From Saccostrea echinata (taxonomy: Eukaryota), in contig NW_026889774.1 in NCBI RefSeq assembly GCF_033153115.1, positions 11,594,001 through 11,658,000 on the forward strand: DNA of 64,000 nucleotides, written 5' to 3'. Shown one piece after another: positions 19,401 through 31,400 of this stretch. The position numbers were made by a program, and so were the translations under genes. The notes beneath the pieces were generated by a model. The model was not told where the DNA came from and searched no databases. It saw only the letters and a list, made by a program, of their open reading frames with translations. Each line of letters opens with the position of its first letter. Position 1 is the first letter of the stretch.

Positions 19401-22400
19401 AATTTTTACATTGATGTTATGGTTTGAGATAAATAGGGGCAAAACTGTAAGGAAATAGAATTATATAGTTGTTGAATGTTTTCATGTGAATGTAAATTGT
19501 AGATAGTCTCTTTCCTCCATGCCCGGACATGATTATTTCTGATCATCACTGATCATGTTTGTTTTCTTTCTCTCTGACATGCAGCATTTGTCATGTATTG
19601 TCAAAGACACCACACAGGTAGAAAGTGAGTCCTTCCTGGCCCCCCGCCATTTACAGGTGGGTCTCATCAGTAATTACGCTAGAATTACCAATGGTAGACG
19701 GGCCTTATCTGCACCCACTAACATTCACAGTAGAGCAATCCTATCTAACATTGCAGTAGAAATGACCACTTACTGGCACCTTACATGTATTTATGTTTAT
19801 TGTATATTTATTAAAAAATTCTATTGTATATTGATACGTAATTATTATTTTCAGGTTAATCTTGGCAAAGACTTAATGTCATTAATTCAGATTATTTACT
19901 TGTAATTTACAATGTTTAAAACTTTTTTTGTTCAATTTGTCCTTATATGAATTGACAATGAAAAAAGTTATGTATTTGATTAAATATTTTCTTAAAAAAT
20001 GGTATTGTATAAATACTTGCATAGCAGATTATTTATTACTGTACATGAAAAATAGGGAAGGATATCTTTCAGAATACAAGGAATTTTATTTTGAGAATAG
20101 GATATTAAACTTTGTTCTAAAGATCCCAGGGTGAAGTAAAATAAGAAAAAAAAACTGACCAAAGCATGTATACAACATTGTTTTTATTTAGCAATATCCA
20201 TGCTTTATTAGTTTTATTTTTTTTTTTTCAACAGTCCTTTTAATATCACAGCTAAAAAATTATAGTCACTTTTATGTTGGCTGCATGAGTAGGAACATAA
20301 ACTTATATTTACTTCTTGGTTGATGTTGATTGTGGTCTATGGTTTATTGTCCTATTTTTGTATCTCCTTTCTTTTTTTCACATCACTCCTTTTGTTTTCA
20401 TTAACAAACATTTTAAGGTAGAGTTGGTAATTTATCATTAAACTTCATGAAGAAGTAGTCACACTTTAGAAAATTATTAGCTAGACAGGTAATGCCGTTT
20501 GTGGCTTGAGTAGATTTTTGCTTTTTTCAATATGTTTGACATTTTGAGCTCATCTCAACAAAGGAGAATCACTATACTCTTGATATTGGCTTTACTTTAT
20601 CAGGTTAAAGTTTGGGAACCAGATTCATTTTCAAGTAACATTTAGCCCCTATGTGTATTGCTTGATTCAGATTAAAGATGAGATGCAATTTGTCTTATAT
20701 ACAATATCTGGTAATTTATCCTAGACTCAACAATTGTGGATTACATAGTTACTTAGGTCTCACAGGTAAACAGTATTATCTAGACCCCTAGCCAATCCAT
20801 ACCTTTTAATGAGAAAAAAGTAATGCATCTTAACAAAATCAAAGATTCATTGGGTATGAGACTTTGCCTTACCTATATGCAATATTTGTTGAGGTGAGCA
20901 ACCATGTATGTAGTATTTTCTCAATGCCCAAAATGATAAAAAAAAAATTCATTTAATGCTTTTGATTTAGTTTCCTAAGACTATACCAAGACTGTATTTG
21001 GTGATCGCTTTTAATTTGTAGTGTGTATGATTAAATACATGTATCACTTTATTTTATTTTAGAATTTTTTAGTTATTGAATTCACAATATTATTCTGGAA
21101 GAAGAGTTTCTAAAACCCAAATCTGTGTTCGAGATGAACTATTTGTTTCTAAACTCCAAATTTGTGTTCATTGTTAGGATGAAGTGGATGATCAAAGATC
21201 TGAATTAGATACCTTGAAAACTAAAGTGGAAGATCTGAAGGAGGATGCAGAGAAAAAGAATGAGATGATTGGAGTAAGTATGGGTTATTGGTGTCCATAA
21301 GAAGCACTTAGAGCTTTTTTTGGGGGGGGGGGGGGGCTAAACAGAAATTCTTTGACAAAAGAAAAGGTCTTCAGACATTATTATTTTGGGGGCACAACTG
21401 TAAATTCATGAAATTAGCTGTTTTTCTGTTGTTTAATATATATTGGTTAATTATTTTGGGAAAGCAGGGGTGAGTTACACCAACAGTTTCTAACTCAAGA
21501 AACACTGGATTTTTATTTTAGAACATATGAATTTTATTTTAATTATAAAAAAGAGGGTTGTGAATTCTTTAGACAGAAGGAATTCTGAGATACAGTACCA
21601 CATGTTGTATGTGAATTAGGTCACTTTCTCTCATAAACTAAATTTTAATTACCTTGCAGAAACTTGAAGATCTGTTGAAAGCAAACGAAGAAGAAAAGAA
21701 AGTAAGTGTTGATTTTCGCTGTCCATGCTAAGGTCAGAAGACTTAATTATATATAATTTTTCCCAGAATTTGAGATTGAAGTATTTAACTATTCCTGAAA
21801 TGACTTCAATGTAGTGTAATAGCTAAGAATGATTTAAAATTTTGTGTTTTTATTTGTAGGATGCTTTGAGGAAGTTAAAAGAGGCAGACAACAAATTAAA
21901 AAAGCATGAAGACTTACAACCAGTGTGGAACTCCACTGTAAAAGGTCTACACCAGGACCTTAGGAAGAGAAATAAAGAGGTCAGAGGTCAACAATTGAAT
22001 CATTTAAATTTGTGGGGGTGTAGGGGGTCAATGTTCATGGACAACCAAAATTTTACCTATTCGTGAGGATGTTATTTTGTGGGTGATTTTTTTATACAGG
22101 AGATTCAGTGAACTGATACATTGACTAAGATTTCATTCATGGGGATGTAAATTTGAGGATAATTTGGTAAGCCATGGGTTACACACAAAATCCATGAGCA
22201 TTAGTCCCTCACAAATGATGATTCCTCAGTGCATGAGAGGTTTATATAGGCTATGCCTGCTGCCCATCCATTTATGTTTCAATATTTACATTTCCAATGT
22301 CTTTGTCCGAGATAAAATTTCAAATAGTAAAAATACTTTATTTCTACATAAATCTACTGGTTCATCGAAAGGCGTGGTGAAAAAAAATCATGTGCGGGGC

Positions 22401-25400: not shown

Positions 25401-28400
25401 AAGTACTGGTATATTCTCTGTGCAAGTGAATGAGAAAAATTAAATTTTTAAAAATGTTTTTTGAACAGGCTGTTGAACCCCTTTCCACTTAACAAAATGC
25501 AGTGATTTCATATTCAGCTGAAAAGTCCCATGCACATATTTTTTGTTGACATTTAATCTAATATGTATTTTTTCCACAATCCTGTGGTGGTGGGCGTGGG
25601 GGTGTCTGTGGGATTACAATAAATAACTTTCCTACTTCACAAACTGTTAATAATGCTTCATTGATTATTGGAATTTTTGGATACACAGATATCTGCCTCA
25701 TATGAATTCACTTGAAATTTTTCATGAACTTCATGTGAAAAGAGCACAAAATAAAAATCATCAAAACTCTAAATTTCACATGAGCAAATGCATATGAGAC
25801 AAATTTATCTGTATAAATTACCATAGAAGATTATGTAAGACACAATGAATGAGCATGACTAACTAGTTGTTTGATTGTGTTTGTTAATTGATGTATTTTT
25901 GACTTTTTTGTTTTTGTGTGTTTTGTTACTAATTAGGAGCTAGACAAACAGCATGAAGACCTTACGTTTTTAGAAGACAGTTTGTCCAGCATGAAACTAC
26001 ATCTAAAGGAACGAGAGCTGGAAGTAGAGGTAGCCATTTTTTTCCTCTATGTTTCGTAAGCTCTAAACATCTTGGGTACAAGTCTGATATGACATGTACT
26101 TGGGATTGACTATAAGAGCTAGAATTAATCATAGCATAAATATTGATGTATGATGGTTCTTTTTGCAATTGCAGGAGACATTGTAATCTCGGGCAAAACT
26201 AAGTTAGATATCATACAGAGTTCTACTGTATTATTAGCATGGTCACCATGGGAGCATGTTCTTGGAATAGAGAAATTCACAGTAATATTGATTGAAGATA
26301 TTATAAGAATATGAAAAAATTAAATTGATTCAGATATTTGCAGCATAAGTTTTTCTTATGTGGAGTTTATCTTTATTTTACTATAGATGTTAAAATATTG
26401 TGTATTGAATTCTTTGAGACATTTGAGAGAGAAGTTATATGGAAAATAATTAATCCAAATTTGAGAACAGGTGATGTTTTAGGTGGCCAGTACTGAATTT
26501 TAAATTGTCTTTGGAATGATGGAATAATGTTTTATTTTTTGTTTGTTTATGACAGACAGTAGACTGTTCATTATACAGTGAATATATCATTTATGTTGAT
26601 CTATGGTATTGCATCCACCTTTCAAAGGTCTGGAGTGCCATCTCTTCTTGGGAGGGATCTATCTGCAGTCATTTAACAGATGCACTATCTATCCAGCTCA
26701 AATAAATGGATTTTAACAAACTATTTGATGTTAATCAAATGATACTTTAAAGGTTTGGGAAGATTTTAAATTCTGCAGAAATTCTACAGAGTTAATTGTC
26801 CAGTTTGTATGATTTTTACACGCCCCTGTGGCACGCGTCAGATATACGCATGATAGGGTATAGGATGTTCAATGTGAAGTGTACGGGCAGTTGAACGTTA
26901 AATAAAAGAAGCTCTTAGGTTTTTTCAGCAAATGATAATAGACTTGTAGGGTCACAATAGGATGCTTTTGAAGACATGCGATATAGTCTTCAATAGATAT
27001 CAGATTTAATTGATGTGTATTGCTCAGTTGGAAGTAATACTTGGTAAACACCTAAGCGACAAGACATCATTTGGTCTCTTTAAGTATGCCTTTGAATCTG
27101 AGCTTGATGAGGAAGGGGGATTAATTTTGACTTGCAGGCTTATTTTCTGTGATTTATTGTTGAATTTGCATTAACTTGTTTGAACCTTGGGGCAATATGC
27201 TGAAAGACACACCGCCAATACAGCATCAAACATGACGAAAATATGAACAAAGTAGTGCATAAATTTTCTCAGTGGGATAAAATTCTTTAAATTAATTAAC
27301 CACTGGATTTTAAATGTTAAGGTTTGGCTGAATTGAGGTGATTTTATTTTTTTTCATGCTTTTTGTTCAAGTTATTTTTTACATGAACTTCAAAAGTTCG
27401 TTTGCAGAAAAACTAAAACTGGAAATTTCTTAAAAGTGCAAAGAAATGATGAATGTTAGATTTGAAGCCTTTGATAAAATACTTGGTAGAAGTAGACATC
27501 AACAATTTTTGGTATTTGAGGGGGGATTTGATGGTAAATCTCTTAAGTACCCATAAGAAATTGAATATATTTGAAAATTTTGATGCAGTACCAGGGACTA
27601 GTAAGACATAAAATTTTTTATAGCAAATAAATTTGGGGTGACATTTATGTTGTATTAAAGTATTTCAAGCCTCTTAATCCAGCTAATTCTTTTTATGCTG
27701 TTTTATTATTATTTTTCCAAATTTATTAGTCTTGTAGGTTGTATTTTATTATCTTTTTCCCTTTTGGAAGGCAGCACTGCCTGATCCTCTTATTATCCTG
27801 TGTATTGACCTTTCAGGCAAATTAACTTTATTGACCCAAAAGGTGTAATTAAGTCGTCTTTATTGATATAAGGTGTTCATTCTTAAAATAAACTTTATTT
27901 TGTGAAAGAGCTCTCTAGGGCCGGAGGGGAATTCATTGACAAGGTCTTTTTGATCCAGGGTTAGGCTAAACTGCCGTCTGCAGATACTTCTTGGGAAAAT
28001 GCCCTTTTAAATAAACTATCCAAAGGGCTATGTGTATTAGCTAGTGTCAAATTGTTAAAAACAGATTGACTTAATCTTTGTCAGTGTAATTGTTATTTAA
28101 AGTTGGATTTTTATCCAGGCTGTCCTTTTTTGTGTCTTATTTTATTTATTGTTATTTAATCTTGGGGACCATTTTTTAGGGTGGAAGAAATATAAGTTCC
28201 TGTTGGCAATTATTTGATTCTTTGAGATAATGGCTAGACGAAAATGTAAAAACTGCAATAAATAGCAAAACAAGCATGCAAGTTCATTGTCAAGGGCTTT
28301 TAGCTTCTAAAGTCTGATTTTAGAATTTGTGTAGTTCTGAGGATTGGAGAATTTTTTTTTTGACTGAACACCAGAGAGGATGACATTTTATATGATGTAT

Positions 28401-31400
28401 TACCAGAATTAATTAACCATGGATTTTAAATGGGGGGACTTTTCATGGGAGTCCAGTGATGAAAGTTTGTGGGACTCTGGTATAGAACAAAAATGGACTA
28501 AAAACTCAGAAATTTCTGCTCCAGTGCAAAGTAAGCCTGTAGGAGAAGGTTGTCATAGAAGTAGCAAACATTCAGAACCAAGATGGGCTTCAGAGTTGTT
28601 AGAAGAAGATTCAGGCATTGAAGAAAAATTTCCAGCAAATTTGAGTGAACTTGAGGAAAAATTTCCAGGAGGTTTTAGTGAACCAAAATGGACTATGGAT
28701 CTCATTGGGATTTTGGACACAAATCTAGTCCAGATAACTGACTTATTTAGCGACTCTAATTTAGAGGAAATATGGACTAAGGAGTTGATTGAAGAGAGAC
28801 TGGCTTTAGAAAATCTGACCATTGATTGTGCTGATTTTTCTTCGCAGAATCTGCTGAAAACTCTGGGTAAGAAGGAGGGAGAATTGGAGGGATTCAAAGA
28901 GCTATTGAACAAGGCAGAGACAGCACTACGGCAGAGTGAAGATGCTGTGCAGGTAGGAAATTAGGATTAAGGGAAAATACTGTATACAGGGAAATTTTCT
29001 CCTTCATTCATTTGCACTTATCTTCACCCTTATCGCAAATGGGCAAATTTTAAATGGGGTGCATTCAAGTAAGCATTAACTCTTCAACACAACTGTGTCT
29101 GGGCGAATTTAATTTAAAATTGGACAAAATTGTTTGCAAATGTAAAGGGGTGAAAATAACCCAGTATACAGTTACTGTCTTCTGAGGGAGGTAACGCAGT
29201 ATGGTATCCTAAATTCGCTTGAATTTCATTCTTGTCTGCAATGGGATCTTTGAAAGAAAAAAGTCATAATTACAGAATTTCATTTTAGCAAGCTGAGGAT
29301 TCCCTTTAAAACACTAAACCAGAAAATAAATGTTAGTTGTGATGATATGGCATAAGATCCCCTTGTTTTGTTGTGTGTGTTGTTAAGAAAAATAATGTGA
29401 ATTTAATAAGTTATATGAATAATTGTTCCATTTGGCATATTTTAGGGCACAAGAAATTTTCTGTGTTTTCAATTGAAAATGACCAACAAATAATTTGAAT
29501 TTTAATAAGTCACCAGACATATGGCATCTTTTTTGGGACACAAGAATTGTTTAGTTTGTGCATTTCTAATCGAAAATTAAATCTTACTTGGTAAATAAAT
29601 TATTATAATTTTTAAAAGAAGATCTGAAAAAAGTTCTGTTAGGCATCTTAAATTTCTGTTGTGTTTTCAATCAAAAATTTAAATCTTATTTGGTAAACAA
29701 ATAATCTGAATTTTAATAAGTTATTTGGGGAAAAAAAAATCCTTTTTGGCATCTTTTGTTTAGGGCACAAGAAATTTTCTATGAGTGTTTTCAATCAAAA
29801 ATAAAATCTTAGTTGGTAAATAATTTGAAGTTTATTTTGGCTTATTTGGATATTTAAAGCAAATAGAATTACGTAGACCCTGAGTCTACTTTATTTCTAT
29901 GACATTCGCCAGTTATGGCTTTTAGGTTTGAAATAGGAGGGAATCACAGATTTGTATATAAAAATTTTAAGTTTGGTTTTATTCTACTCTGTTGATTAAT
30001 TAACAGTGATACTATTTACAGTGTACTACATGACGTTTTGTCCCTTTAATAAAGCCAAAGTCAATATTTTCTTAACTCTGTTGTTTACTAACTCAACTAC
30101 ATAATTTCAAATAGTACTTTAGTGAAAATTAATGTTATTAATGTTTAATTTTTTAAATTATTCAGTCAACATTTTAAGGGCGCTTGCTACAAACAAGATG
30201 CATGAACTGGTATATATTTAGCTCACCTCAACGAAGTTATGGGAGCTTATGTCATACCCTCGGCTTGAGCATTCCAGGTTAAAGTTTTTGAAGCAGATTT
30301 CTTTTCAAGTTCTTCTATTGGCTTACACTGATCAGAGGTGTACATATGGACAATAATTTTAGTATGTTTCATTGTACAAGTAAGGTTATAGAAACTGCAT
30401 TTTCAGCCAACAAATGACCAGGTTAATGATTTTGAAAGTCTTTGCCAAAACTTTTTTTTCAGCACATGCCCTTCTGGCAGGTACATCCACTGACAGGATA
30501 GGGCATTAATGGGTGATCAAGATTTTACATAGGAATATATAGGAAAAAATCTTTTAAAAAATCTCAAGAACAGCAAAGGCATGATTGATATGGATTGATG
30601 TGGAAGCATCCTTAAGTAGTGTAGATTCAAGTCTGTTCAAATCATGACCCCTGGGGGTAGGGTGGGGCCATAATAGGTTATTAAATTTTACAGAGGAATT
30701 CTATAGAAAAAAAAAATCTTTAAAAACCTTCATAAGAACAGCAAAGGAATGATTAGTCATATTTATATGGAAACATCCTCAGATTCAAATTTGTTCAAAT
30801 ATTGCACCCAGAGGGTAAGGTAGGGCCACAATAGTCATAAGAATATATAGGGGGGAAAATCTGCTGATAAAGAAAAGTATGTCCAAAGTGACTCAGATGA
30901 GCATTGTGGCCCATGGGCATCTTGTTAACTAGTACAATGGTTTTTTTTTTTGATATTTGATATAAACTAGACAATGCCATGGAATATTTATTTACTGGAA
31001 GTCATGCAGGGTTTTAGAAAAGCTTCATCACATAATGGATAAAAAATGTCTGACCATCTCAGCTTTATGAAGAGAGTGGAGGAAGATTCTAAAAAAAAAA
31101 AAGGCTTAAGATGAAGTTTGTTATAATCTGTTGTTTTCACCATGCAATGCATAGACTAGAAAAAATATTTTAAAAGAAGATATTTTTTCTTCCTGTCCAA
31201 TAGAATCTGTAATGTTTTAGATATGTGATCTAACGGCATTCATGTATATTTGTAGGACCTCCAGTGTCAACTGAGGAAAGAGAAGGAAATTGCCTCAGAG
31301 GATTACAGATCTCAACATTTACAGGTGAGTAGGTGGGAGAACATGTAACATTTCAAGTGTGTGGTTAGGTGTTACATGTAACATTTAAAGGTGTGTGGCT

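What the first reader, a model, noticed from the sequence alone, without database searches (positions are those of the whole stretch)
28419..28952. Hidden alternative N-terminus: CM1-less centrosomin isoform with acidic Trp repeats and DSG degron-like motifs
Seen: 143 stop-free codons in an otherwise AT-rich intron, starting at aaccATGG and in frame with exon 14. The peptide is acidic, Trp-rich and internally repetitive: DSGIEQKW / DSGIEEKFP / LEEKFP and SEPRWASELL / SEPKWTMDLI / EEIWTKELI. An isoform starting here would lose the CM1 gamma-TuRC activator but keep the rod, SxIP and CM2. Known: fly cnn and mammalian myomegalin use alternative termini to retarget the protein, DSGxxS is the beta-TrCP phosphodegron, and acidic-W-x-x-L is the LIR core. 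Inference: an undescribed non-nucleating or differently targeted, possibly short-lived isoform from an intronic promoter.
Basis: partly seen in the sequence, partly recalled or inferred. Interest (0 to 1): 0.75.

Follow-up and report, generated by a model that had tools for sequence, protein, structure and literature searches.

The report
Conserved alternative start exon, oyster myomegalin
An intron of an oyster centrosome-scaffold gene holds a conserved start exon that would give a protein lacking its microtubule-nucleating motif and carrying an acidic, tryptophan-rich tail instead, a design already known from a vertebrate relative.

Summary
ORF 28419-28964 (+) gives 143 stop-free codons running straight into exon 14 (28848-28952) of a CDK5RAP2/myomegalin/centrosomin gene. 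The window's exons match XP_061183808.1 (Saccostrea echinata) at 100%.

Chance is unlikely: P about 2e-5, 1 of 2000 shuffles, and coding-type codon use in this frame only. The ORF is single-copy. It is kept open from the same Met in at least four oyster lineages at 50-58% identity, with every gap in frame. A deposited Pinctada imbricata model (2052 aa, no CM1) starts with a similar Trp-rich acidic segment.

Transcript evidence is thin. One 235-nt contig, in 1 of 4 RNA-like runs, lies on 28376-28610, and the rest of intron 13 is empty. None of 28 oyster RefSeq models seen starts here.

Best reading (0.7): an alternative first coding exon producing a CM1-less isoform. Its N-terminus is disordered and ends in a helix that abuts the rod.

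There is no [WFY]xx[LIV] and no DSGxx(x)[S/T]. The conserved unit is W-x-x-[D/E]-L-[L/I].

The closest known case is vertebrate EB-MMG. I class this as a new variant of a known kind, of moderate interest.

The parts
28419..28847 (+). Isoform-specific coding part of the alternative first exon (143 codons), contiguous and in frame with exon 14
   Evidence: Conserved open frame in homologues. Codon-usage score positive in this frame only. Single copy in the genome.
28848..28952 (+). Exon 14, shared with the canonical isoforms (aa 439-473 of XP_061183808.1); donor GT at 28953-54
   Evidence: tblastn map. Contigs of 4 of 4 RNA-like runs lie exactly on it. Nearly invariant in the alignment.
28415..28422 (+). 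Start codon in the context aaccATGg (A at -3, G at +4)
   Evidence: Met 1 is invariant in all 13 aligned sequences.
28410..28412 (+). In-frame TAA three codons upstream of the ATG. It bars entry into this frame from any upstream exon.
   Evidence: read directly.
28380..28412 (+). Short upstream ORF (ATG, 10 codons, TAA) in the same frame, inside the stretch covered by the RNA-like contig. It is a possible translational brake if the transcript starts upstream of it.
   Evidence: read directly. Contig start at 28376. Its function is inferred.
28376..28610 (+). Stretch covered by the only contig that lies on the isoform-specific part (run X1, 235 nt, 16 differences, depth 2.3)
   Evidence: tables 2, 3 and 8. 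Bins 26168-28375 are empty in X1.
28419..28475 (+). Conserved block 1 (aa 1-19): M-[DE]-x-x-x-E-x-F-x-W-E-S-S-D-[DE]-S-L-W-[DE]
   Evidence: Invariant or nearly invariant columns. N-termini of 72 cluster members.
28575..28634 (+). Conserved block 2 (aa 53-72): E-P-x-W-x-S-E-L-L-E-(E)-D-S-G-I-E-E-K-[LF]-P
   Evidence: WASELL / WSSELL / WTSELL.
28618..28683 (+). 33-bp tandem duplication (2 copies) adding 11 in-frame residues (LSELEEKFPGGF region), specific to this species among the sequences seen
   Evidence: Gap in all 12 other rows of the alignment.
28749..28829 (+). Conserved block 3 (aa 111-137): S-N-L-E-E-x-W-x-x-E-L-I-E-E-R-L-x-L-E-x-L-x-x-D-C. Predicted helix just upstream of the exon-14 helix. 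This is the only block recognisable outside oysters.
   Evidence: AlphaFold2 helix 115-137, pLDDT about 68-86..
25937..26029 (+). Exon 13 (31 codons), the last canonical exon bypassed by the alternative start; it is a cassette exon
   Evidence: Contigs in 3 of 4 runs. Skipped in 3 O. edulis and 2 C. virginica RefSeq models.
31256..31324 (+). Exon 15, the expected splice partner of the shared donor at 28952

Best explanation
28419-28952 is a genuine alternative first coding exon, a 5'-extended form of exon 14, of the oyster CDK5RAP2/myomegalin/centrosomin gene. A transcript that begins in intron 13, or is spliced in from a non-coding leader, would be translated from ATG 28419 and use the ordinary exon-14 donor. 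The product would be about 2135-2258 aa. Its first 438 canonical residues, including the gamma-TuRC-binding CM1, are replaced by 143 isoform-specific residues. Residues 1-110 are an acidic, Trp-rich disordered segment with two conserved short motifs: F-x-W-E-S-S-D-D-S-L-W-[D/E], and W-x-S-E-L-L-E-D-S-G-I-E-E-K. Residues 115-137 form a conserved helix (W-x-x-E-L-I-E-E-R-L-x-L-E-x-L) that abuts the coiled-coil rod. The likely role is a scaffold isoform that does not activate nucleation. Its N-terminal motifs would dock a different partner or place the protein elsewhere, as the unique N-terminus of vertebrate EB-MMG does. Shown: the ORF, its conservation, its coding character, and the loss of CM1 if it is used. 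Inferred: the promoter, splicing onward, the long product, and any partner.
For: ORF and start context. Chance is unlikely. Single copy among 923 Mb. Twelve homologous ORFs, 11 of them with 100% query coverage at 50-58% BLASTP identity; Met 1 is invariant and all gaps are in frame. All 72 cluster members examined keep the frame, and 71 of 72 start at the same Met; these ORFs are seen only if intact, so this is ascertained. By identity of their exon-14 part, these ORFs match Ostrea edulis (P0001, P0002; 100%), Crassostrea virginica (P0003; 100%) and a third unnamed lineage (P0006, P0007, P0011; 97% to this species). The rod (aa 439-700) is 80-85% identical in the same comparisons. The exon therefore evolves faster but stays far from unconstrained. 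The Pinctada imbricata model FSP39_002455 (P0078, 2052 aa) begins with 165 Trp-rich acidic residues, runs into the exon-14 equivalent, is spliced onward, and has no CM1. A Tegillarca granosa ORF and model carry LESLWEAELWQEELVLDGL directly upstream of the same exon, with 17.3 bits against the oyster alt-only profile where controls score 2 bits or less. RNA-like runs cover exons 13 and 14 exactly and leave intron 13 empty, except for one 235-nt contig of X1 on 28376-28610. The structure model gives pLDDT below 50 over most of 1-110 and helices at 115-137 and 142-177. CM1 lies at aa 59-131, and aa 39-217 match CDK5RAP2 chains of solved gamma-TuRC complexes.
Against: Transcript support is one low-depth contig (2.3) in 1 of 4 runs. 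It is 93% identical, so it may come from a close relative or a divergent allele. The runs are only guessed to be RNA, and contigs cannot show a 5' end. No contig covers 28611-28845. None of the 28 oyster RefSeq models seen starts with this exon: 2 S. echinata, 10 O. edulis, 15 of 58 members of the C. virginica cluster, and 1 S. cucullata. All 70 oyster-type ORF records run on into the intron, so they are genomic and show no splicing. In the X1 contig 7 codons changed non-synonymously and 3 synonymously. All non-synonymous changes lie in codons 21-49, so that linker is weakly constrained. A same-frame uORF (28380-28412) lies inside the covered stretch. Outside oysters, similarity of the isoform-specific part is marginal: Pinctada 4.1 bits and Mytilus-like 2.5-2.7 bits against 1.3-1.9 bits for controls. 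It is absent for the long ORFs P0082 and P0084. P0075 (79 aa) looks like a broken or divergent copy in the third oyster lineage.
Confidence: 0.7

Rival explanations
1. A short nested product. A transcript starts at the same place but ends in intron 14, either unspliced at the exon-14 donor or polyadenylated early. It would give a protein of about 181 aa made of the acidic Trp-rich segment plus one helix of the rod. Such a protein could bind the rod or its partner without being a scaffold.
For: The genomic ORF closes 4 codons after exon 14. In 70 of 72 homologous records the frame also closes 0-36 residues into the intron. No spliced alt-exon-to-exon-15 record was seen in any oyster.
Against: The read-through tails are not conserved (GSIIYMVKI, SLS, none). 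The donor is the one used by all canonical isoforms. The Pinctada model splices onward. The records are genomic ORF calls, so reading into the intron is expected and says nothing about the RNA.
Confidence: 0.1
2. A conserved coding exon that is now barely or never used in this species, either a relic or an exon limited to a rare cell type or stage. The isoform would then contribute little protein.
For: 0 of 28 oyster RefSeq models start here. Only 1 of 4 runs has a contig on it, at a quarter of the exon depth. There is a uORF just upstream. The linker is fast-evolving.
Against: An unused exon would not stay open, with the same Met and three conserved blocks, across at least four oyster lineages whose rod is already 15-20% diverged. 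The species-specific 33-bp duplication kept the frame.
Confidence: 0.12
3. An internal extension of exon 14 through an upstream acceptor. This would insert part of the stretch into the CM1-containing protein rather than create a new start, as the Tegillarca granosa model P0104 is drawn.
For: P0104 (2264 aa, with CM1) reads ...GVWLESLWEAELWQEELVLDGLEEDCFLYSQNLMKNLGKKEGE internally. A pyrimidine tract plus cag lies at 28361-28374.
Against: Exon 13 ends in phase 0. Entry at 28375 or 28377 meets a stop within 19 or 12 codons (read directly), and the TAA at 28410-12 closes the frame. The one internal acceptor-like site I checked (28749-50) is out of frame. The N-terminal block and the Met are the best conserved part among oysters, which an internal extension would not explain. 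P0104 is an unreviewed 'hypothetical protein' model.
Confidence: 0.04
4. A chance open frame in an intron, with no coding function.
For: Long introns hold many ORFs. Pfam, the protein atlas and structure-sequence searches give no family.
Against: P about 2e-5; 1 of 2000 shuffles; 0 of 5000 intronic windows reach its codon score. The ORF is conserved from the same Met across genera.
Confidence: 0.03

Closest known systems
EB-MMG, the CM1-less isoform of vertebrate myomegalin/PDE4DIP (Roubin et al. 2012, PMC3575658; abstract and passages read)
   Same: Same gene family. [quoted passage not shown] That N-terminus retargets the protein: Golgi targeting through the N-terminus, and no gamma-TuRC recruitment.
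   Different: The EB-MMG N-terminus is basic and Ser/Pro-rich and carries SxI/LP EB1-binding motifs. The oyster one is acidic (pI 4.2) and Trp-rich with no SxIP. No sequence similarity was found, and the alt exon has no hits outside bivalve-type ORFs. Whether the join to the rod is at a homologous position was not tested. EB-MMG is experimentally characterised; the oyster isoform is not.
Pinctada imbricata gene model FSP39_002455 (P0078; UniRef name 'CDK5 regulatory subunit-associate...')
   Same: A deposited bivalve model that starts with a 165-aa acidic, Trp-rich segment (8 W, pI 4.05), runs straight into the exon-14 equivalent (QKLLKSLGKKEGE...) and continues spliced. It has no Cnn_1N. The motif LEQRWDSDLWEEELVLDDI sits at the place of EEIWTKELIEERLALENLT.
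   Different: It is an unreviewed automatic model named 'hypothetical protein'. It also lacks about 400 rod residues present in oysters, with CC_CDK5RAP2 at 198-300 rather than 870-969. Profile similarity of the isoform-specific part is marginal: 4.1 bits against 1.3-1.9 for controls.
Tryptophan-acidic (W-acidic) kinesin-light-chain-binding motifs (Pernigo et al. 2018, PMC6214655; passages read)
   Same: Short disordered, acidic peptides centred on Trp, often in pairs. The oyster block 1 has two W-[D/E] eight residues apart in a Ser/Asp-rich context (FSWESSDESLWDS), nearly invariant among oysters.
   Different: [quoted passage not shown] In the oyster the residue before Trp is Ser or Leu, and [DE]W[DE] occurs 0 times.
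Other N-terminally truncated bivalve models of the same gene: Pecten maximus isoforms X1-X7 and Mizuhopecten yessoensis isoform X8
   Same: Automatic RefSeq models that start inside the canonical N-terminal region. The Pecten cluster representative carries no PF07989 in the precomputed list. Predicted CM1-less products are therefore not rare in bivalves.
   Different: They start at other positions (MLRTSWKNWRR..., MEALAEKLKV...) with no Trp-acidic segment. I did not scan P0225 (Mizuhopecten X8) against Pfam.

Membership tests
Alternative first coding exon (internal start) of a multi-isoform gene | Start codon in frame with the downstream constitutive exon, and an upstream in-frame stop that excludes use as an internal coding exon | tested here: met
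   ATG 28419, TAA 28410-12, and a frame continuous through 28848-28952.
Alternative first coding exon (internal start) of a multi-isoform gene | Open frame and start codon conserved in related species | tested here: met
   Twelve homologous ORFs with Met 1 invariant and all gaps in frame. 71 of 72 cluster members start at the same Met. At least three further oyster lineages by exon-14 identity.
Alternative first coding exon (internal start) of a multi-isoform gene | Transcripts that begin at or upstream of the exon and not in the canonical first exon | tested here: inconclusive
   One 235-nt contig on 28376-28610 in 1 of 4 runs, with the rest of intron 13 empty. Contigs cannot show a 5' end, and the runs are only guessed to be RNA.
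Alternative first coding exon (internal start) of a multi-isoform gene | Purifying selection at codon level (dN/dS below 1) | not testable with these tools
The only DNA comparison is the X1 contig, with 3 synonymous against 7 non-synonymous codons, all of the latter in the linker.
CDK5RAP2 / myomegalin / centrosomin family (host gene) | CM1 (Pfam Cnn_1N, PF07989) near the N-terminus | tested here: met
   aa 59-131, E = 2.4e-21. aa 39-217 match CDK5RAP2 chains of solved structures at E down to 3.7e-32.
CDK5RAP2 / myomegalin / centrosomin family (host gene) | CDK5RAP2-type coiled coil (PF23246) and the C-terminal CM2 | tested here: inconclusive
   PF23246 is met at aa 870-969. CM2 was not tested: precomputed PF26710 is listed but is absent from the local Pfam copy, and I could not see its name.
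EB-MMG-type isoform | [quoted passage not shown] | tested here: met
   By construction of the reading frame. The isoform itself is inferred, not observed.
EB-MMG-type isoform | SxI/LP EB1-binding motifs in a basic Ser/Pro-rich unique N-terminus | tested here: not met
   0 SxIP in the 143 aa, and pI 4.2. S-x-[IL]-P tetrapeptides occur only in the shared part, at aa 1158, 1234, 1327 and 2446.
beta-TrCP phosphodegron | D-S-G-x-x(-x)-[S/T] | tested here: not met
   DSGIEQ and DSGIEE only: 0 matches in the window peptide. There is 1 match among 6 oyster-type homologues scanned (P0003), 0 in the distant P0012, and 1 in Pinctada. The regular expression is recalled, not taken from a call.
LC3-interacting region (LIR) | Core [W/F/Y]-x-x-[L/I/V], usually preceded by acidic residues | tested here: not met
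   0 matches of [WFY]xx[LIV] in the 143 aa, and 0 acidic-preceded matches in 7 homologous ORFs. The Trp motifs are W-x-x-[DE]-L-[LI]. The core pattern is recalled.
Kinesin-light-chain W-acidic motif | Trp flanked on both sides by Asp/Glu (for example EWD), with a hydrophobic residue at -2 | tested here: not met
   [DE]W[DE] occurs 0 times. FSWE and SLWD have an acidic residue only after Trp. Definition from PMC6214655.

The most novel reading that the evidence does not exclude
The acidic Trp-rich N-terminus is a bivalve-wide docking module. It would consist of paired W-[D/E] motifs plus the W-x-x-E-L-I-E-E-R-L helix. It would recruit a motor or adaptor, for instance a TPR-type reader of aromatic-acidic peptides such as kinesin light chain, to a CM1-less CDK5RAP2/myomegalin scaffold. 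One gene would then yield a nucleating isoform and a transported or anchoring isoform for non-centrosomal microtubule arrays. This would have arisen independently of, and be chemically opposite to, the basic EB1-binding N-terminus of vertebrate EB-MMG.
Probability: 0.1. Interest if true: 0.6.

Novelty: new variant of a known kind. Interest (0 to 1): 0.42.

Why it matters
CM1 proteins decide where microtubules are nucleated. Isoforms without CM1 are known functionally only from vertebrate myomegalin. A second, sequence-unrelated CM1-less isoform conserved across oysters, and probably other pteriomorph bivalves, would show that splitting the scaffold from the nucleation activator by an internal start is a recurrent solution. 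It would also give a compact 143-aa module with three conserved motifs to test for partners. On the practical side, the exon begins none of the 28 oyster RefSeq models I could see, so it is a concrete annotation gap. The gene also carries misleading automatic names, such as trichohyalin-like, golgin A4-like, CEP250-like and TPR-like.

Tried and rejected
Family and look-alike searches gave nothing.
- Pfam on the 178-aa peptide returned 0 families at E up to 1.
- The protein atlas had no usable hit and no structural model.

Fetching DNA of the homologous ORFs for dN/dS and flank comparison failed.
- One metagenome scan with alignment A1 matched 516 pattern stretches, none a relative. I left the permitted second scan unused.

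Looking for annotated long isoforms that carry the exon found none beyond Pinctada.
- Searching with the Pinctada N-terminus returned only P0078 itself plus 9 canonical Mytilus-type proteins (8 named Mytilus, 1 unnamed Logan record).
- Those hits match through the exon-14 part only. The upstream alignment is coiled-coil noise.
- Searching with the rod, aa 439-700, plus the cluster lists, gave no oyster model starting with the exon.
- This is not exhaustive. Only 15 of 58 C. virginica cluster members were listed, and an isoform filed in another cluster would be missed.

I considered reading the contig breaks at the 5' edge of exon 14 as proof of a second upstream path. I rejected this because annotated skipping of cassette exon 13 explains them. 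My arithmetic on the bin depths also leaves no extra contig on 28744-28845.

Coverage just downstream of exon 14 (28928-29295) is not intron retention. That stretch is a dispersed repeat with 1276 first-look candidates in the genome.

I rejected the LIR, beta-TrCP and strict W-acidic readings after the pattern scans.

Homology of the long upstream ORFs P0082 and P0084 to the oyster exon is rejected; they are no better than controls.

Earlier notes of the scan hold nothing on this locus.

Exons were handled apart, so the joined-model step is left out.

Supplementary files were not consulted. Those of PMC3575658 (EB-MMG motif alignment, Fig. S5) might refine the comparison.
Full report
**What is there**

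The + strand carries ATG at 28419-28421 in the context aaccATGg. It is preceded by an in-frame TAA at 28410-12. From this ATG the frame stays open for 143 codons to the acceptor ...ttcttcgcag at 28847. It continues through the 35 codons of the next exon (28848-28952) and closes 4 codons after the donor GT at 28953-54, giving the ORF 28419-28964 of 181 aa.

The 143 isoform-specific residues hold 7 Trp (4.9%, against 0.5% in the canonical protein) and 32 D+E against 12 K+R, with pI 4.2. Part of the internal repetition is a 33-bp, two-copy tandem duplication at 28618-28683. It adds 11 in-frame residues that none of the 12 aligned homologues has.

**The host gene**

A 2430-aa protein found by the representative search (P0077) maps onto the window exon by exon, mostly at 100% identity, from about 10046 to 58407. 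Its source name is 'trichohyalin-like isoform X2 [Saccostrea echinata]', XP_061183808.1. A 2553-aa sister is named 'myomegalin-like isoform X1'.

- Pfam finds Cnn_1N (CM1) at aa 59-131 and the CDK5RAP2-type coiled coil at aa 870-969.
- Residues 39-217 match CDK5RAP2 chains of solved gamma-TuRC complexes.
- Exon 13 is 25937-26029, exon 14 is 28848-28952 (aa 439-473) and exon 15 is 31256-31324.

**Is it more than chance?**

- Stop triplets occur at 0.072 per triplet in the flanking introns, so 143 stop-free codons have P = 2.3e-5.
- One of 2000 shuffles of the 5.2-kb intron pair gave a run of 181 codons or more in any frame.
- A codon log-likelihood trained on this gene's exons against its introns is +0.17 per codon in the ORF frame and negative in the other five frames.
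- None of 5000 random intronic 429-nt windows reached that value, with or without stop codons counted.
- The score is at the low end of the gene's exons (0.2-1.1). This fits a non-coiled-coil composition.
- GC and A-over-T skew rise at about 28400.
- The stretch is single-copy in the 923-Mb assembly, so it is not a repeat.

**Conservation**

A length-limited protein search gave 12 homologous ORFs. Eleven of them cover 100% of the query at 50-58% BLASTP identity. In the alignment, Met 1 is invariant and all gaps are in frame. Three blocks stand out:

- aa 1-19: F-x-W-E-S-S-D-D-S-L-W-[D/E];
- aa 53-72: E-P-x-W-x-S-E-L-L-E-D-S-G-I-E-E-K-[L/F]-P;
- aa 111-137: S-N-L-E-E-x-W-x-x-E-L-I-E-E-R-L-x-L-E-x-L-x-x-D-C.

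All 72 members of these clusters that I could read keep the frame, and 71 start at the same Met. This carries an ascertainment bias, since broken copies would not be in these clusters.

By identity of their exon-14 part, the ORFs match named proteins as follows (taxon placement is my inference from 35 residues):

- P0001 and P0002 match Ostrea edulis at 100%.
- P0003 matches Crassostrea virginica at 100%.
- P0006, P0007 and P0011 belong to a third oyster lineage (97% to this species).

In the same species pairs the rod (aa 439-700) is 80-85% identical. The exon therefore evolves two to three times faster than the rod, but it is clearly held open.

Outside oysters the picture is weaker.

- Pinctada imbricata: the deposited model FSP39_002455 (P0078, 2052 aa) begins with 165 acidic, Trp-rich residues (8 W, pI 4.05). 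It runs into QKLLKSLGKKEGE..., continues spliced and has no Cnn_1N.
- Tegillarca granosa: an ORF and its model carry LESLWEAELWQEELVLDGL just upstream of the same exon.
- Mytilus-like ORFs begin MES[FL]WN.SL.EEE..LR.
- A profile of the oyster isoform-specific part alone scores as follows:

| Target | Bits |
|---|---|
| Tegillarca ORF (P0073) | 17.3 |
| P0074 | 12.0 |
| Pinctada (P0078) | 4.1 |
| Mytilus-like (P0079, P0080) | 2.5-2.7 |
| Canonical-upstream controls | 1.3-1.9 |
| P0082, P0084 (long ORFs) | no better than controls |

Homology beyond oysters thus rests on position plus the shared W-x-x-[D/E]-L-x-E-E-x-L-x-L motif. It is probable rather than shown.

**Transcription**

The run search found no holder on record as RNA. 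It listed five small runs holding 8-10% of the words. I laid four of them on 25800-31300 at 90% likeness.

- Their contigs lie on exon 13 (3 of 4 runs) and exon 14 (4 of 4 runs), with no cover of intron 13. They therefore behave as spliced RNA.
- Only X1 has a contig on the isoform-specific part: 235 nt on 28376-28610, depth 2.3 against 8-10 for the exons, with 16 differences.
- Bins 26168-28375 are empty in X1.
- Nothing lies on 28611-28845 in any run.
- Of the listed differences, one is upstream of the ATG, 3 codons changed synonymously and 7 non-synonymously. All seven are in codons 21-49, the linker that also varies between genera.

This is a positive but thin sign of transcription, possibly from a close relative or a divergent allele. 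Contigs cannot place a 5' end.

Two things that could have been over-read are explained otherwise. The contig breaks at the edge of exon 14 fit annotated skipping of cassette exon 13, seen in O. edulis P0095, P0191 and P0192 and in C. virginica P0212 and P0215. The cover at 28928-29295 comes from a dispersed repeat.

None of the 28 oyster RefSeq models I could see starts with this exon.

**How it most likely works**

The in-frame stop at 28410-12, and stops in the other possible entry frames (read), mean the stretch can only be a first coding exon. It would be transcribed from within intron 13 or preceded by a non-coding leader; a pyrimidine tract plus cag at 28361-28374 leaves that open. Translation from ATG 28419 and use of the shared donor would replace canonical aa 1-438, CM1 included, by 143 new residues.

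AlphaFold2 with the 13-row alignment gives pLDDT below 50 over most of residues 1-110. It gives a helix at 115-137 (pLDDT about 68-86) followed by the exon-14 helix at 142-177 (81-93).

My reading is a disordered acidic arm with two conserved docking motifs, and a conserved helix that caps or extends the rod. The whole would be mounted on a scaffold that can no longer engage gamma-TuRC through CM1. The 10-codon uORF at 28380-28412 lies inside the covered stretch and may damp translation (inferred).

**Comparison with what is known**

- EB-MMG of vertebrate myomegalin is the closest precedent. It is described as 'devoid of CM1 domain', with a 'unique N-terminus' 'encoded by a single exon', no predicted domains, Golgi targeting through that N-terminus and no gamma-TuRC recruitment (PMC3575658, passages read).
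- The oyster module differs chemically. It is acidic and Trp-rich rather than basic and Ser/Pro-rich, and it has no SxIP.
There is no [WFY]xx[LIV] anywhere in the 143 aa; the Trp units are W-x-x-[D/E]-L-[L/I], three in this species and two of them conserved. No DSGxx(x)[S/T] is present.
- The block-1 pair of W-[D/E] recalls kinesin-light-chain W-acidic motifs. These are defined as Trp flanked by acidic residues on both sides (PMC6214655, passages read), and that is not met here.

**Verdict**

This is a real, conserved, largely unannotated alternative first coding exon giving a predicted CM1-less isoform. It is a new variant of a known design. Expression and function are still to be shown. My two paper searches on CM1-less isoforms of this family listed no bivalve study; that is the extent of my claim that it is undescribed in print.

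Noticed in passing
window 28975-29175 (within 28960-29300): About 200 bases just downstream of exon 14 belong to a dispersed repeat family. There are 1276 first-look candidates in the genome, and the 39 scored copies elsewhere are 73-78% identical. This explains the RNA-like depth of 17-200 there.
   Followed up: partly
window 30216-30951: A stretch of intron 14 draws enormous summed contig depth in all four runs (up to about 155,000), with dozens of internal joints. It looks like a very abundant, variable repeat or transposon transcript family.
   Followed up: no
window 25937-26029: Exon 13 (31 codons, phase 0 on both sides) is a cassette exon. It is skipped in 3 Ostrea edulis and 2 Crassostrea virginica RefSeq isoforms, and its contigs in the runs end 28-30 nt into both neighbouring exons, as at graph branch points.
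   Followed up: partly
window 28380-28412: A 10-codon upstream ORF sits in the same frame as the main ATG and ends 6 bases before it. Its conservation could not be checked without DNA from relatives.
   Followed up: no
window 28361-28376: A run of 12 T followed by gactgaacaccag|ag looks like a splice acceptor, and the only contig on the exon starts at 28376. The alternative exon may have a non-coding leader exon upstream rather than its own start site.
   Followed up: no
P0075 (unnamed record, third oyster lineage): This 79-aa ORF begins only at the MELIEER motif and carries several substitutions in the otherwise invariant exon-14 part. It may be a broken or duplicated copy of the exon in that lineage.
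   Followed up: no
P0012 / P0072 (unnamed genomic contigs of 21.7 and 188.8 kb): In this more distant lineage the Trp-acidic ORF runs through the exon-14 equivalent and straight on into exon-15-like sequence (…EAMLEVQKQLQEEKEKGE…). The intron after exon 14 seems to be absent there.
   Followed up: no
P0082 and P0084 (unnamed records): Two lineages have very long open frames (427 and 479 residues) directly upstream of the same conserved exon. The two share the run ESDSDYRTYSD with each other but show no significant similarity to the oyster exon. They may be larger alternative N-terminal exons at the same position.
   Followed up: partly
RefSeq names of the orthologues: The same gene is named trichohyalin-like, myomegalin-like, golgin subfamily A member 4-like, CDK5RAP2-like, CEP250-like, nucleoprotein TPR-like or 'uncharacterized' in different isoforms and species. 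These are automatic names driven by coiled-coil similarity.
   Followed up: no
Pecten maximus isoforms X1-X7 (P0098, P0219-P0224) and Mizuhopecten yessoensis X8 (P0225): These scallop models start inside the canonical N-terminal region. The Pecten start lies near the equivalent of window 19576-19656, and the Pecten representative P0098 has no CM1 in the precomputed domain list. They may be further internal starts or incomplete models.
   Followed up: no
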